Source of the DNA: Podarcis gaigeae
Taxonomy: Eukaryota
Length of the DNA: 64,000 bases
Reading direction: 5' to 3' (one strand)
Assembly: GCA_964106915.2 (NCBI GenBank)
Contig: OZ066929.1
Within the stretch, counting starts at the first letter, position 1. Every line of letters begins with the position of its first letter. The notes beneath the pieces were generated by a model. The model had not been told where the DNA came from and made no database searches. It saw only the letters and a list, made by a program, of their open reading frames with translations. The position numbers and the translations under genes are program-made. Positions 18,786-61,255 of this stretch are shown here, one piece after another.

Positions 18786-18972
18786 AGGGAAGGTGGTTTA
18801 TACCAAATCAGACTATTCATCCATCTAGTTCAATACTGTCAACACATAATAAGAAGTAGTTCTCCTGGGTTTCAGACACAAGTCTTTCCCATTCCTACCT
18901 GGAGATGCTGGGGACTGAACTCGGGATCTTCTGCATACAAAGCAGATACTCTACAGTGCCACTAAGCTATGG
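18786..18972 (-). mobile_element. Squam2-like SINE nested in a hAT-like element
   Basis: …CTACCTGGAGATGCTGGGGACTGAACTCGGGATCTTCTGCATACAAAGCAGATACTCTAC…CACTAAGCTATGG is a reverse tRNA head. Related copies at ~24731-24880, 27260-27330, 42590-42750 and 48092-48410. Confidence 0.7.
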
Positions 18973-19515
18973 ATGTGATGAATGATTATGCCTCTCTCTG
19001 TGTATTGAAGCAGACTGGACTGGAGCTGAATCTTACGTCAGTGCTAGCAATGGAATAGCATTCTCTACTGCACTCAAGAGCAGTAGACTAGCTTAGGAGG
19101 AAGAGCGCAAATTACACGGCACACAAAGTTCCAACAGATCACTGCTGCTCATCACCTCCCAGCAAACATAGCCTGAGGTAGCCATCACATTCTGTTTAAT
19201 GATAGGGCCGGCCCTGCCTAGTTTCTCCATTTCAAAGCAGCTGCTGTGTCCTGTCTCAACCATCTCTCAACCATCCCCACTGAAGGATCTTGTCTAATAG
19301 GGGCAAAGAGGAAACATCTCCTAATTCATGTGTTTTACTACCATTACCCTGAGCCAGAAAGGCATTAACAACCCATCTCCCCAGATGCTTCTTGCCTACA
19401 AGGGGCTTATTCTGTATGACATGTGCAATCTCCTTGTCCTTTACTTAACACCATGGATGATCCATACTCCTCACAAGCATTCCTCTTTAAGACTGCCTAC
19501 TAAAGGCTATTCCAT

Positions 19516-19797: not shown

Positions 19798-20186
19798 TAG
19801 GGTGGCCACTTATTCATCAATAAACAAGGATACATATTTTCATAATATTTCCACGAGTCAGCTTATATTCATAATTAGAAAAAATGTTCTAATTTAAATA
19901 GAAATACCATACATCTTGGCATAATGGGGGAGACTGACCAGATGAACCTTGTTGTTGTTGATGATGTTATTGTTGTTGCTGATCAATCTAATATTCAAGT
20001 GCTTAGTGTTGATGGGCAACTTCAAGACTCCAGCTGATCTCTCTTCTTAGAGTTCTGTATCTTTAAGCCAAATCAAATGGACCATGTGACCATTCAAATA
20101 GAGGATGCCTTCAATTAGAAGACTCCTTTGACAGCCCTTCAAAGAGAGAACCACTTTCCATTAAATTGAGAGACTTGGCCACCCTA
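19798..20186. mobile_element. Non-autonomous DNA element with TAGGGTGGCCA termini
   Basis: TAGGGTGGCCA at ~19798 and TGGCCACCCTA at ~20176-20186; same terminal class as 57323-57461. Confidence 0.6.
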
Positions 20187-20935
20187 TCAAGGCATAGAGT
20201 AGGATTGGTGAACTTATGTTATTCGTGGACTAGAACTCCAGCCAACCCTAGTCAGCATAATCAATGGCTAGGGATAATAAAAGCTACAATCCAACAACAT
20301 CTGGGATGCCACAGGCTGCCTATCTCTGGACTAGAGGGAATTGATTGATAGTGGTGGCAGCAGCAGCAGTATGCTGCAGTGCTGTGCCTGGCCTTACCAT
20401 CTAGAAAGCCAGACATTTCTTCATAGCAAAATTACTCAATCTCCTGTCCTCTGGAGCCAGTATTCCATACCCTTCCCTCTTTACAACCTGCCCTCTTGAT
20501 TTCTAGTCTCCTGCAACTACATCCTTCTCCTGTAGCATTAATGTCTTGGTGATGACTGTCAGAATTTTCAAGGGCCCATGATAATATGACCTAAGCTGAA
20601 CATGAAAGAAGCACCATATATTTCCATGTATAATACTTTTTTTTAGTATTTTTTTTAGTCCTATACATGGATGGTGAATGCATTAAAAGCTCAACCATTT
20701 TGTGTGATCTTGGGTGTTGGTGGGGCGCACCCAAGGCACCAGCGGGGATTGCTACACTGGTGCCAGTGCTTTGAATATTTAATAAAATATCAGAGTTGAT
20801 CTGGTGGATGTTTAAAATATTGATTTCTTAATTTGGGGTTCAAAAAAATAGGGGTCATCTTATACATTGGGGCATCTTATATTTATAAACATGTAAACTA
20901 TGGTCTACCTGAATATTTCATGGCTCCCTGATCAG
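20175..20935 (+). repeat. Copy 2 of the old local duplication, interrupted by a mariner-type MITE (~20613-20893)
   Basis: Collinear with 2255-2716. The extra ~280 bp (CCATATATTTCCATGTATAA…GTCATCTTATACATTGGGGCATCTTATA) resembles the MITE at 53931-54189 and is absent from copy 1. Confidence 0.7.
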
Positions 20936-52200: not shown

Positions 52201-52291
52201 TACATGGAACCATAGGATGTTGGGCCACACAAGGTTCTCTCCCAGCTCTACCTGGAGATGCCAAGATTGAACTTGGGGTGTTGTGCATGCA
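52201..52291 (-). mobile_element. Squam2-like SINE that hosts the retrocopy insertion (continues at 53748-53769 and ~54401-54412)
   Basis: CTCTCCCAGCTCTACCTGGAGATGCCAAGATTGAACTTGGG…TGCATGCA, resuming as GCATGCAAAGTAGATAG at 53751; compare the intact in-window copy at 18886-18955. Confidence 0.75.
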
Positions 52292-52394
52292 TTTTTTTTC
52301 CATCTCGGACCTCAGTGGAAGTTTGTTTGTGGTGTCAGTGGTAAAGAGTGCATGGCGGCAGTGCTGGTCTGAGAAGGAGCCGGGGGTGAAGGCA

Positions 52395-53398
52395 ATGGGG
52401 GCATACAGCATGGAGAAGGCTTCTCCCGTGCTCTGCTGCTATCCTGCCCATCGAAGTTGGCAAACGTTTTGAGTTCCACACACTGCCCTTCTGCTAATGT
52501 CTCAGTACCAGAAGGTTCATCTGGGATGATCATTGCTGATGCTTCCAGAAATCCCGACCTTCTTTTATTTCATAAGAGCAGTTCCTCTGCTCCTGATGAT
52601 TCCATATTAGCCATAACGAATAGAGAAAAACTGAGAGTCTATGAAAATGCATATGAGGAACACTTCTCTATACTGGAAAATGACCTCTTTATCAAGAGTA
52701 CAGTGGACGCTCGAGTTGCAAATGTGATCCATGCAGGAGGCATGTTCGCAACCCACAGAGTTCGTGACCCGCAGCCCCACGTCTGTGCACATGAGGGTTC
52801 CGATTCGACCCTTCTGCTCGTGCGCAAAGCGTGATTTAGTGTTTCTGTGCATGTGCAAGTGCCGAAACCCGAAGCATCTGTAACCCAATGTATGACTGTA
52901 CTAGCAAATGGTTTGCTGGAGAATACCAGCTTGTTCCGTTTATGAGTAAAATGTGTGTGCATCAAGTCTTCCTTAGCATAGCACTGCCCTTCAGCTAATC
53001 TCTCCATACTAGAAAGTTCCTCTGGGATGATCATTCCTAATATATTGAACCATTCCAATATTATTACTTTATACAAAAAGAACTATTCCTCCTCTTTTTG
53101 GCAATACATCTTGAGCATAGCCAAGGGACACCTGAATCACAGTGCTGGCATGTATGAAGAGCAGTTCTATATATCTGACAGTGGCCTTGCTATCAAGAAT
53201 GCTTATGAAAGACTTGCTGGAGAGTACCAGCCTGTTTATCAGCAAAATGAATCCTGTGTGCTTCAATTTTTCATTAATATGCCTGTTTCAGGTTCAGGAT
53301 GCATACATATCTGGATCTACATCACACCAGGAATTGCCATCATTTTGCTGCTGTGTTACATAATCTGTCAAAAACTAAAGAGAACAAAAACCCATTAA
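52395..53398 (+). pseudogene. Intronless (processed) pseudogene of a type I membrane glycoprotein with two tandem atypical Ig V-like domains
   Basis: Decayed signal-like segment (FSRALLLSCPSKLANVLS). Domain 1 after MITE removal: HCPSANVSVPEGSSGMII…NDLFIKSTSKWFAGEYQLVPFMSKMCVHQVFLSI. Domain 2: HCPSANLSILESSSGMII…SGLAIKNAYERLAGEYQPVYQQNESCVLQFFINM. TM IWIYITPGIAIILLLCYIIC followed by basic QKLKRTK. Six N-glycosylation sequons. Disabled by the MITE and frameshifts near 52396 and 52981. Confidence 0.8.
52701..52898. mobile_element. Tigger/pogo-like MITE inserted into Ig domain 1
   Basis: TA|CAGTGGACGCTCGAGTTGC … GTAACCCAATGTATGACTG|TA. Excision restores the reading frame and the alignment to domain 2. 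Confidence 0.9.
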
Positions 53399-53540
53399 AC
53401 TTGCTGCTTAGCAAACATAAAAGAAAAGTGGAAGAGGCTCATCCAGCAGAAAATATGGAGACTCTCTCATCCCTGGGAATAAAAACTTCACAGTGACTGA
53501 AGAGCAGAAGCTGCAGGATCTTGACCTCTCTGCCTTAGAG

Positions 53541-53747
53541 GTATTTATTGTTGCTGTATTTGTATCTTTATTATAAATCTCATTGTGGTCTATGTGGAAA
53601 TTGTTCAGCATGGTTGAGTATTTGTTTAATACTTTTATGTATTGTTTATGAATACTTTTGTTACTTCCATATTGTAAATTGCCTTGAGCATGGTTTGAAC
53701 TGTGGAAAGGCAGCATACAAATAAAATTATGTATGTATGTATGTATA
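53541..53747 (+). mobile_element. L2-type LINE 3' tail with (TATG)n
   Basis: 53682-53722 matches the reverse complement of 60669-60709 at 39/41 nt; TGTAAATTGCCTTGAG…GAAAGGCAGCATACAAAT motif. Confidence 0.8.
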
Positions 53748-53769
53748 TGTGCATGCAAAGTAGATAGTT

Positions 53770-54400
53770 GGGATGCGAGTGGCGCTGTGGTCTAAACAAC
53801 TGAGCCTAGGGCTTGCTGATCAGAAGGTTGGAGGTTCGAATCCCCATGACGGGGTGAGCTCCCACTGTTCGGTCCCAGCTCCTGCCAACCTAGCAGTTTG
53901 AAAGCACGTCAAAGTGCAAGTAGATAAATACCGTATTTTTTGCTCTATAAGACTCACTTTTTCCTTCCTAAAAAGTAATGGGAAATGTGTGTGCGTCTTA
54001 TGGAGCGAATGCAGGCTGCGCAGCTATCCCAGAAGCCAGAACAGCAACAGAGATCGCTGCTTTCGCTGTGCAGAGATCCCTCTTGCTGTTCTGGCTTCTG
54101 GGATTCAGAATATTTTTCTTCTTGTTTTCCTCCTCCAAAAATTAGGTGTGTCTTATGGTCTGGTGCGTCTTATAGAGCGAAAAATACGGTAGGTACTGCT
54201 CCGGCAGGAAGGTGAATGGTGTTTCTGTGCACTGCTCTGGTTTTGCCAGTAGCGGCTTAGTCATGCTGGCCACATGACCTGGAAAAACTGTCTGTGGACA
54301 AACGCCAGCTCCCTCAGCCTATAGAGCGAGATGAGCGTGCAACCCCAGAGTCATCCATGACTGGACTTAACTGTCTGGGGTCTTTTACCTTTACCCTTTT
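53770..54400 (+). mobile_element. Full-length Sauria SINE (Squam1) with nested MITE
   Basis: GGGATGCGAGTGGCGCTGTGGTCTAAAC… head with GGTTCGAATCCC B box, and an (ACCTTT)n-like tail. Confidence 0.92.
53931..54189. mobile_element. Mariner/Tc1-type MITE nested in the Sauria SINE
   Basis: TA|CCGTATTTTTTGCTCTATAAGAC … GTCTTATAGAGCGAAAAATACGG|TA. The SINE sequence is continuous across it (GATAAATA|GGTAC). Confidence 0.92.
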
Positions 54401-60653: not shown

Positions 60654-61255
60654 TACGTACATCATTTGATTTGTATGCTGCCTTTCCATAATTCAAACCA
60701 TGCTCAAGGTGGCTTACAACATAAAAGAAAATGCATAATTACAAATGTAACGAATGTAGTCATAAACTATAAAGATGTTATCGAAAAGTAAGCAACCAAA
60801 TTAAACAATTTCCACATAAATCATAATAAGATTTAAATTCAAGATGCAAAAATAATAATATCCATGAAAGCAACCACCCCTCACTATCCCCCCCTAAACA
60901 ATACCCCAGCCCAAGAGTCTGTTCAGCAGCCTCAGCTTTTGTAGCTGGAGTCAGTCAGGGCCTTGCCCTTCCAGGCCCTATTCTTCCAGGACTCACAGTC
61001 AAGATGGTAGTAGGGCTTAGGAGAGCTCCTACAGTCTGGACAAAAGATGGATTCAACAATCAGCAGGCTGACAGTAGAGATGAGTATGTTGAACTTATCA
61101 TGCATCTAGGATGGAAGAAGTCAGGATCCTGGGCAGAACAGCATGAGCGCCAAATGCAGTGCTAGGTGCTAAACTAAAAGTGGCCAAACCCACTTCAATG
61201 ACTTTTAAATGTAAATAACAGACATGGTTGGGGGAGATCTATCTGGATTGGCACC
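60654..61255 (-). mobile_element. 5'-truncated L2-type LINE (long 3' UTR)
   Basis: Tail shared with 53541-53747. Candidate TSD TGGCGG at 60648-60653 and 61256-61261. The 5' end reads IDLPQPCLLFTFKSH, weakly like an L2 ORF2 C-terminus. Confidence 0.6.

What the first reader, a model, noticed from the sequence alone, without database searches (positions are those of the whole stretch)
52282..53757. LINE-tailed retroposon carrying an Ig-like receptor gene as cargo
Seen in sequence: a Squam2-like SINE is split, and the 10-mer TGTGCATGCA is duplicated exactly at 52282-52291 and 53748-53757, so 52292-53747 entered as one insertion. It holds a GC-rich leader, then a contiguous signal-like segment, two Ig-like domains, a TM helix and a tail with no introns. 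It ends in ~200 bp of LINE 3' UTR terminating in (TATG)n, with no poly(A). Established: vertebrate IgSF genes usually encode each domain on a separate exon; L2/CR1-clade LINEs recognise their own 3' tail ('stringent' retroposition), whereas ordinary processed pseudogenes are L1-made and poly(A)-tailed. Inference: a cell-surface receptor transcript was mobilised by L2-type machinery. It may be a one-off chimera (template switch, or an L2 piece in the parent 3' UTR) or a member of a SINE-like family that spreads a membrane-protein gene.
Basis: partly seen in the sequence, partly recalled or inferred. Interest (0 to 1): 0.85.

Follow-up and report, generated by a model that had tools for sequence, protein, structure and literature searches.

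The report
L2-tailed retrocopy of an Ig receptor
A lizard jumping-gene enzyme of the L2 type, not the usual L1 type, appears to have copied the spliced message of an immune-type surface receptor gene into a new genome site fused to the L2 tail; the copy is dead and there is no sign that it spread.

Summary
52292-53747 is one insertion, flanked by an exact 10-bp duplication of the split SINE's own bases.

It is an intron-less, full-length copy of the mRNA of a squamate-specific receptor gene. That gene has four exons in Lacerta, Zootoca and Podarcis. The domains are real Ig V folds of the CD2/SLAM (2B4) type.

The insert ends in about 190 bp of the 3' UTR of an autonomous LINE. That UTR has a conserved two-tier hairpin, AATAAA and a (TATG)n end. 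There is no poly(A), and the target nick is not L1-like.

Two corrections:
- The cargo/tail breakpoint is 53559-53569 (an 11-nt overlap), not about 53540.
- The T8 at the 5' end is the parent's own 5' UTR.

The copy is dead:
- TGA at codon 7.
- A 200-bp MITE in domain 1.
- 11 nt missing at the domain 1/2 junction.
- A stop and a frameshift in the tail.

The only intron-bearing last exon of the same type that I could reach (Zootoca) matches up to the breakpoint and then lacks this tail. So the tail is not an old part of the gene. I slightly favour an L2 template switch over an L2 fragment in the parent's UTR.

Copy number, empty sites and RNA could not be tested. Nothing supports a mobile family.

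The parts
52227..52291 (.). Left part of the split tRNA-like SINE (host of the insertion).
   Evidence: Aligns to the SINE copy at 18876-18939. The rebuilt empty site aligns across the junction.
52282..52291 (+). Target-site duplication, left copy (TGTGCATGCA).
   Evidence: The bases belong to the SINE.
52292..52351 (+). Copy of the parent's 5' UTR, starting with the T8 run.
   Evidence: Homology to Zootoca and Lacerta exon-1 regions starts at their own T6 run, about 60 nt before the ATG.
52352..52472 (+). Exon-1-derived start codon and signal region, with an in-frame TGA at 52370-52372 where homologues have Arg.
   Evidence: The junction to the next block equals the parents' splice junction.
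52473..52980 (+). Domain-1 (IgV) exon copy, interrupted by a MITE. It lacks 11 nt at its 3' junction.
   Evidence: 76-82% identical to parental D1 exons. All parents' spliced form has 11 more bases at the D1/D2 junction.
52701..52900 (.). Later insertion: a Tc1/mariner-like MITE (198 bp) plus its TA duplication.
   Evidence: Absent from all parental D1 exons. TA...TA flanks and degenerate terminal inverted repeats. Related copies lie in Zootoca introns.
52981..53285 (+). Domain-2 (IgV) exon copy.
   Evidence: 86-89% identical to D2 exons of four lacertids. AlphaFold2 and Foldseek give an IgV fold.
53286..53569 (+). Last-exon copy. It holds the TM helix (about 53321-53389), a TAA at 53396-53398, a frameshifted cytoplasmic tail, and the start of the 3' UTR.
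   Evidence: Matches the Zootoca genomic last exon L003:4905-5232, which is preceded by a splice acceptor and encodes an open 83-codon TM plus tail. The helix comes from the model.
53559..53747 (+). LINE (L2-like) 3' UTR tail. 53559-53569 overlaps the cargo.
   Evidence: Local score 77 (z 25) against the tail copy at 60654-60861(-). Only 26 (z 3.9) against the Zootoca UTR. The same architecture follows an 888-aa APE+RT ORF2 in L006.
53673..53721 (+). Two-tier 3' hairpin of the tail.
   Evidence: -15.8 kcal/mol, z -2.7. The dot-bracket pattern is nearly the same as in the full-length LINE's tail. The same hairpin occurs in 13 copies. The outer stem shows compensatory changes.
53720..53725 (+). 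AATAAA, 22 nt before the end of the insert.
53728..53747 (+). (TATG)n microsatellite end, with no A-run.
   Evidence: The sister copy ends in a decayed version of the same repeat.
53748..53757 (+). Target-site duplication, right copy.
60654..60861 (-). Second, cargo-free copy of the same tail subfamily.
   Evidence: No ORF2 remnant upstream and no TSD found.

Best explanation
This is one retroposition event made by a tail-recognising, non-L1 LINE (L2-like).

The proposed steps are:
1. The enzyme nicked the SINE.
2. It primed reverse transcription on the (TATG)n end of an L2 RNA.
3. It copied about 190 nt of L2 3' UTR.
4. It switched template, at an 11-nt T-rich overlap, into the 3' UTR of the spliced mRNA of a two-IgV CD2/SLAM-like receptor gene.
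5. It copied that mRNA to its 5' end.

The result is a bipartite chimeric processed pseudogene flanked by one 10-bp duplication. It has since decayed and is not mobile.

Shown: single insertion, intron loss, full-length cargo, native LINE tail end, no poly(A), and a breakpoint with overlap.

Inferred: which enzyme made it, and the RNA-level switch.

The broader claim (one L2-type event, a one-off, dead) I hold at about 0.75. The template-switch route specifically I hold at about 0.4.
For: - Exact TSD made of the SINE's own bases, and a gap-free rebuilt empty site.
- Four exon blocks are contiguous in the insert but separated by GT-AG introns in five lacertid loci.
- Cargo homology starts at the parents' T-run in the 5' UTR.
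- The tail belongs to a LINE family. Its full-length member has an 888-aa ORF2 with RVT_1 at 3e-31 and a weak Exo_endo_phos match, followed by the same hairpin, AATAAA and microsatellite.
- The insert stops at that family's native end with no A-run.
- The bottom-strand nick context is CACA/ACAC, not TTTT/AA (read).
- The breakpoint lies at 53559-53569. The cassette follows the Zootoca intron-containing last exon up to 53569 and a cargo-free tail copy from 53559.
- Beyond the breakpoint it is no closer to the Zootoca UTR than any family member is.
- Single-TSD chimeras made by LINE template switching are documented for L1, for the fungal MGL LINE and for CR1-mobilised SINEs (PMC2104539, PMC11838501, PMC5729268).
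Against: - The parent gene of this genome was not seen. An L2 fragment sitting at that UTR position in the true parent would give the same sequence.
- The Zootoca exon may be a paralogue. Gene conversion in the cluster blurs orthology.
- The switch lands inside the 3' UTR rather than at the mRNA's 3' end.
- The 11-nt overlap is T-rich and matches the available sister tail at only 9 of 11 positions.
- The L2 clade is not shown by phylogeny.
- No experiment shows that this LINE switches templates.
Confidence: 0.4

Rival explanations
1. An L2 fragment was resident in the parent's 3' UTR. A 5'-truncated L2 copy of about 190 bp had inserted in sense orientation about 65 nt after the stop codon of the parent gene, in this lineage only. 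The mRNA therefore ended in an L2 tail and was mobilised in trans by L2 reverse transcriptase, as SINEs are.
For: - The hairpin and microsatellite are intact, and the insert ends exactly at the tail's native end.
- AATAAA lies 22 nt before the end, so the tail could also have set the mRNA's 3' end.
- Short cargo-free tail copies of the same size exist.
- L2 pieces lie in sense orientation downstream of sister genes in three genera.
- Tail-dependent trans mobilisation is the accepted SINE/LINE model (PMC3747384).
Against: - The one intron-bearing last exon of this type that I could read (Zootoca) lacks this tail at the breakpoint.
- The route needs two events instead of one.
- No such parent was found. 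Searches for annotated proteins with this last exon were blank.
Confidence: 0.33
2. L1 made it. This would be either an ordinary poly(A)-primed processed pseudogene whose A-tail was lost, or a 'tailless' retropseudogene made by L1 internal priming on the microsatellite.
For: - Tailless retropseudogenes were reported outside mammals only in the green anole (PMC5322556).
- L1-like elements are present in lacertid loci.
- The TSD start (TGTG) has partial microhomology with the TATG repeat.
Against: - There is no A-run at all next to a perfect TSD.
- The nick context is not TT/AAAA.
- The 3' end coincides with the native end of a hairpin-bearing LINE tail. Internal priming would not predict that.
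- An L1 event on a polyadenylated mRNA should keep some A's.
Confidence: 0.1
3. It is a mobile, SINE-like family. The receptor-plus-L2-tail unit would be a recurrent retroposon present in many copies with the same breakpoint.
For: Only that the tail carries everything a tail-recognising LINE should need.
Against: - No second copy in the 64-kb window.
- None in six lacertid loci, where every relative has introns.
- A retrocopied Pol II mRNA brings no promoter.
- This copy is multiply disabled.
- A genome-wide count was not possible.
Confidence: 0.04
4. Two independent insertions. An L2 fragment landed in the SINE first, and a retrocopy later landed exactly at its 5' edge, or the reverse order.
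For: Nested insertions are common here. The neighbouring SINE holds a MITE.
Against: - Only one TSD pair brackets the whole unit.
- There is no second duplication and no A-run at 53540-53570.
- The breakpoint shows an 11-nt overlap, not a blunt nested edge.
Confidence: 0.03

Closest known systems
Bipartite chimeric retrogenes made by LINE template switching (U6-L1 and mRNA-L1 in mammals; WEIRD/Mg-SINE-MGL in Magnaporthe). Sources: PMC2104539, PMC11838501.
   Same: - The 5' part is a copy of a cellular RNA.
- The 3' part is a 5'-truncated LINE 3' end in the same orientation.
- The two parts are fused directly.
- One TSD brackets the whole unit.
   Different: - The LINE here is a vertebrate hairpin-and-microsatellite (L2-like) element, not L1.
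- There is no poly(A).
- The 5' part is a full-length spliced mRNA joined inside its 3' UTR.
- The switch itself is inferred, not shown.
Tail-sharing SINE/LINE partnerships of 'stringent' LINEs (UnaL2/UnaSINE, CR1-mobilised TguSINE1/PittSINE). Sources: PMC3747384, PMC5729268.
   Same: A non-LINE RNA carries the partner LINE's 3' hairpin and microsatellite, and is inserted without poly(A).
   Different: - The head is a Pol II mRNA of about 1.05 kb with no internal promoter.
- It is a single dead copy as far as can be seen.
- The microsatellite is (TATG)n, not the amniote CR1 octamer.
Classical L1-made processed pseudogenes.
   Same: Intron loss at the parental splice junctions, 5' UTR-to-3' UTR coverage, TSD, rapid decay.
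   Different: No poly(A), a non-L1 target site, and a LINE tail at the 3' end.
Tailless retropseudogenes (PMC5322556).
   Same: A retrocopy with a TSD and no A-tail. This type is reported in an anole as well as in mammals.
   Different: Those are 3'-truncated at single-stranded sites of the source RNA and are ascribed to L1. Here the end is a complete foreign LINE tail.
CD2/SLAM-family receptors (2B4/CD244, CD48, CD2, CD58).
   Same: - The predicted IgV fold is closest to these.
- There is a marginal Pfam Receptor_2B4 match in homologues.
- Both are type I membrane proteins.
- The DxGxY-like F strand lacks the canonical Cys.
   Different: - 11-18% identity only.
- Two or more V-type domains in tandem instead of V plus C2.
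- A Cys pair lies at the very start and end of each domain.
- The family is squamate-only and uncharacterised.

Membership tests
Retrocopy / processed pseudogene | Parental introns are missing precisely at the splice junctions. | tested here: met
   Exon1/D1 and D2/TM junctions equal the parents' spliced junctions. The D1/D2 junction is also intron-free but lacks 11 nt.
Retrocopy / processed pseudogene | Target-site duplication bracketing the copy. | tested here: met
   Exact 10 bp made of host-SINE bases.
L1-type processed pseudogene | 3' poly(A) tail. | tested here: not met
   No A-run between 53725 and the TSD.
L1-type processed pseudogene | TT/AAAA-like target nick. | tested here: not met
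   The bottom strand reads CACA/ACAC at the nick.
LINE-tailed non-autonomous retroposon (SINE-like family) | 3' tail shared with an autonomous LINE, including hairpin and microsatellite. | tested here: met
LINE-tailed non-autonomous retroposon (SINE-like family) | Many dispersed copies with the same head/tail junction and different TSDs. | not testable with these tools
There were zero further copies in about 230 kb of lacertid DNA held.
LINE-tailed non-autonomous retroposon (SINE-like family) | Own (internal) promoter. | not tested
   The head is an mRNA copy that starts at the 5' UTR. No promoter scan or tRNA search was run on it.
Template-switch chimeric retrogene | Cellular-RNA copy fused head-to-tail to a 5'-truncated LINE 3' end, inside one TSD, with no poly(A) between the parts. 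| tested here: met
Template-switch chimeric retrogene | The source gene lacks the LINE piece at the fusion point. | tested here: inconclusive
   The Zootoca intron-bearing exon lacks it. The parent in this genome was not seen.
L2 clade LINE (for the tail) | Autonomous element with APE plus RT ORF2 and a hairpin-plus-microsatellite 3' end. | tested here: met
   L006:20244-22907(-) has RVT_1 at 3e-31 and a weak Exo_endo_phos match. The tail lies at 20035-20243.
L2 clade LINE (for the tail) | RT phylogeny places it in the L2 clade. | not tested
   No reference RT set was available. The C-terminal ORF2 motif is recalled from memory only.
Amniote CR1 | 3' octamer microsatellite ATTCTRTG (PMC5729268). 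| tested here: not met
   Copies end in (TATG)n, (TTA)n or (ATG)n.
Ig superfamily, V-set, CD2/SLAM-like | Ig V beta-sandwich fold. | tested here: met
   The model has pLDDT 86.8 and nine strands. The top Foldseek matches are 2B4, CD2, CD48 and CD58, with probability 1.00. This is a prediction, not a solved structure.
Ig superfamily, V-set, CD2/SLAM-like | Significant sequence-profile match. | tested here: inconclusive
   None for the window's own pieces. Receptor_2B4 scores 21.2 bits against a cut-off of 21 in one homologue, and is below cut-off in the others.

The most novel reading that the evidence does not exclude
The receptor-plus-L2-tail unit is not unique. Because the parent's mRNA carries (or easily acquires) an L2 tail, it is a recurrent L2 substrate. 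Lacertid genomes would then hold several copies with the same 53559-53569 breakpoint and different TSDs. That would be a LINE-tail-driven retroposon family spreading a membrane-receptor gene, perhaps with intact copies.
Probability: 0.05. Interest if true: 0.85.

Novelty: new variant of a known kind. Interest (0 to 1): 0.45.

Why it matters
Retrocopies of genes in vertebrates are ascribed almost wholly to L1, which accepts any poly(A). Tail-recognising LINEs (CR1, L2) are held to explain why birds and some other lineages have few retrogenes (PMC3136929; Suh 2015, cited in PMC5729268).

This is a clean natural case of a full-length spliced mRNA inserted with an L2-type tail and no poly(A). It shows how such LINEs can still duplicate host genes, either by template switching or through a tail embedded in a UTR. 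It also gives a sequence signature to search for: a hairpin-plus-microsatellite end, no A-tail, and a breakpoint with overlap.

It also brings to notice an uncharacterised, squamate-only cluster of CD2/SLAM-like multi-IgV receptor genes.

As it stands it is one dead copy, so the weight is modest.

Tried and rejected
Tools that gave nothing:
So there are no reads, no RNA evidence, no copy count and no read laying.
- An exact-protein look-up of the window's 123-aa ORF found nothing on record. The same was true for P0021.
- Pfam on the ten longest window ORFs found no gene that could anchor an orthologous site.
- A homologue search with the Zootoca type-B last-exon peptide was blank. That says nothing about longer proteins.
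- A paper search for the tail motif gave only chance hits. A search for Anolis L2 3'-end descriptions found none.
- Earlier-findings look-ups gave only this same stretch and unrelated notes.

Readings rejected:
- A minus-strand reading, with T8 taken as a poly(A). The T-run is homologous to the parents' 5' UTR.
- My own interim claim that Zootoca shares the cargo/tail junction. The local alignments put the true breakpoint at 53559-53569, and Zootoca diverges there.
- The idea that the 200-bp insert in domain 1 came from the parent's intron. It lies mid-exon, has TA flanks and is in the opposite orientation.

Other negatives:
- No TSD was found for the second tail copy.
- MAFFT/RNAalifold recovered only the outer stem of the hairpin. 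The inner stem is seen only in single-sequence folds.

Procedural notes:
- A MITE-free domain 1 was joined only inside local scripts, for a window tblastn and for a tree.
- The window has no N.

Full report

The 10-mer TGTGCATGCA stands at 52282-52291 and 53748-53757. An exact 10-mer repeat is not significant by itself. The window holds 91 distinct exact 10-mer direct repeats at 1-2 kb spacing.

The weight comes from three independent boundaries that meet at these bases:
- The flanks are a tRNA-like SINE with another copy at 18876-18975. With 52292-53757 removed, the site aligns to that copy straight through the junction. The duplicated bases are therefore the SINE's own.
- Homology to the parent gene's transcript begins at 52292.
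- A LINE tail ends at 53747.

The SINE continues after a second, unrelated nested SINE. The window has no N.

**2. What the cargo is**

A search of 1.84 billion representative proteins with domain 2 plus TM found 15 relatives at E <= 0.001. The ones whose sources I looked up are uncharacterised squamate proteins from Podarcis, Zootoca, Lacerta, Anolis, Phrynosoma, Pogona, Hemicordylus, Eublepharis, Rhineura, Paroedura and Gekko, plus one metagenome protein.

In frame, the insert reads from a Met at 52352 through a long signal region, two domains of about 100 aa each, a TM helix and a cytoplasmic tail. This is colinear with proteins such as P0001, P0007 and P0020.

In the genomic loci of Lacerta agilis (L001), Zootoca (L002, L003), Podarcis raffonei (L004) and P. 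muralis (L005, L006), these blocks are separate exons in genes of 4-11 kb, with GT-AG introns. In the insert they are contiguous:
- Two junctions equal the spliced junction exactly.
- The D1/D2 junction is also intron-free but lacks 11 nt that every parent's spliced form would have.

The T8 run at the 5' end matches a T6 run about 60 nt upstream of the parents' ATG. It is therefore part of the 5' UTR and not an antisense poly(A).

The cargo is a full-length processed mRNA copy.

**3. Are the domains Ig-like?**

- Pfam finds nothing in the window's pieces.
- Pfam finds only a borderline Receptor_2B4 match in homologues.
- An AlphaFold2 model built on a 25-row family alignment has mean pLDDT 86.8, with nine strands and one helix.
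- Foldseek ranks 2B4/CD244 first, then TCR V domains, CD2, CD48 and CD58.

This supports an IgV fold of the CD2/SLAM type.

**4. State of the copy**

It is dead:
- TGA at codon 7, where relatives have Arg.
- A 198-bp Tc1/mariner-like MITE plus its TA duplication at 52701-52900, inside domain 1.
- A frameshift from the 11-nt loss at the D1/D2 junction.
- TAA right after the TM helix, and a frameshifted tail compared with the open Zootoca exon.

Its own branch is 0.09-0.13 changes per site in exon trees, so it is old. Domain 1 groups with a P. raffonei paralogue (support 97/95). Zootoca copies cluster by species, which suggests gene conversion, so no parent can be named.

**5. What the tail is**

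From 53559 the insert matches a cargo-free copy at 60654-60861(-).

Thirteen copies of a wider family were found in about 230 kb of lacertid DNA. All share:
- a two-tier hairpin;
- then an A-rich run that reads AATAAA in most copies (the sister copy at 60.7 kb has it mutated);
- then a microsatellite.

Single-sequence folds give nearly the same dot-bracket pattern for the insert's tail and for the tail of a full-length element, with z scores of -2.7 and -3.2. The outer stem shows compensatory changes.

In L006 the same tail follows, after about 150 nt, an open 888-aa ORF2. That ORF2 has a reverse transcriptase domain (3e-31) and a weak endonuclease match. ORF2 C-terminal remnants precede other copies.

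The tail is therefore the 3' UTR of an autonomous LINE of the hairpin-plus-microsatellite kind.
- It lacks the amniote CR1 octamer described in PMC5729268.
- I call it L2-like from the ORF2 C-terminal motif as I remember it. That is not a test.

**6. The end and the target**

- The insert stops at (TATG)n, which is the family's native end, with no A-run.
- AATAAA lies 22 nt before the end.
- The nick context is not TT/AAAA.

A poly(A)-primed L1 event is thus unlikely. L1 'tailless' priming, reported in an anole (PMC5322556), would not predict an end at a foreign LINE's native terminus.

**7. How cargo and tail came together**

That was wrong. Local alignments show the following:
- The insert follows the Zootoca genomic last exon and UTR (L003:4905-5232) up to 53569. 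That exon is preceded by a splice acceptor.
- The insert follows the L2 tail copy from 53559.
- The two overlap by 11 T-rich bases.
- Past the breakpoint, the tail is no closer to the Zootoca UTR (score 26, z 3.9) than other family members are. It is very close to the cargo-free copy (score 77, z 25).

An intron-bearing gene therefore has the cargo without this tail. Two routes remain:
- A template switch from L2 RNA into the mRNA's UTR. This would be a bipartite chimeric retrogene as known for L1, MGL and CR1-driven SINEs (PMC2104539, PMC11838501, PMC5729268).
- A lineage-specific L2 fragment in the true parent's UTR, followed by SINE-like trans mobilisation (PMC3747384).

I give 0.40 and 0.33. 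Only the parent locus of this genome can decide.

**8. Is it a family?**

No second copy exists in the window. None exists in the six loci, where every relative has introns. A copied mRNA brings no promoter. I put the family reading at about 0.05.

**9. Verdict**

This is a real L2-tailed, poly(A)-less, full-length retrocopy of an Ig-type receptor mRNA. It is most likely a one-off chimera and is long dead. It is a new variant of a known kind, of moderate interest.

Procedural note: a MITE-free domain 1 was joined only in local scripts.

Noticed in passing
window 53770-54397, with 53930-54190 inside it: A second, tRNA-derived (Squam1-like) SINE is nested in the same old SINE 12 bp after the retrocopy. 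It is itself split by a 261-bp MITE whose ends are inverted repeats of each other (ACCGTATTTTT...AAAAATACGGT).
   Followed up: partly
L001-L006; proteins P0001-P0023: An uncharacterised, squamate-only family of type I membrane proteins has 1-4 tandem CD2/SLAM-like IgV domains. Each domain has a Cys at its very start and another near its end. In Zootoca the genes form a tandem cluster lying inside a C-type lectin gene on the other strand. One Zootoca isoform has four domains in D2-D1-D2-D1 order. The last exons come in two types that are 68% alike.
   Followed up: partly
L001:21730-22450, L004:21747-22460, L005:15746-16460, L003:22422-23430: A 5'-truncated L2-like copy (ORF2 C-terminus plus hairpin tail) lies in sense orientation 0.8-2.5 kb downstream of the stop codon of the type-A receptor genes in Lacerta, Podarcis and Zootoca. 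It is an old shared insertion. Whether these mRNAs end in it is unknown.
   Followed up: no
L006:20035-22907 (-): This is an L2-like LINE in Podarcis muralis with an uninterrupted 888-codon ORF2 and a complete hairpin and (ATT)n tail. It is possibly a young or active element.
   Followed up: partly
L003:15298-15481 and L002:19273-19433: Copies of the same MITE family that interrupts domain 1 of the retrocopy lie about 110 bp downstream of the D1 exon in two Zootoca paralogues, in the opposite orientation. I read this as coincidence, but the family is not abundant in the DNA held.
   Followed up: partly
window 52976-52985: The 11 nt missing from the retrocopy span exactly the D1/D2 exon-exon junction (4 nt of one exon and 7 of the next). 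This could be a chance deletion, an aberrant splice or a reverse-transcription slip. It is unexplained.
   Followed up: partly
L002:21398-23782 and L003:3-2817 (-): An LTR-retrotransposon-like pair of long ORFs (795 aa in L002, 704 plus 276 aa in L003) lies between the D2 exon and the type-B last exon of one Zootoca paralogue. I read them as gag-pol/integrase by eye only and ran no domain search.
   Followed up: no
L003:5648-6088 (+): A LINE endonuclease-domain ORF starts about 200 bp after the Zootoca type-B 3' UTR tail.
   Followed up: no
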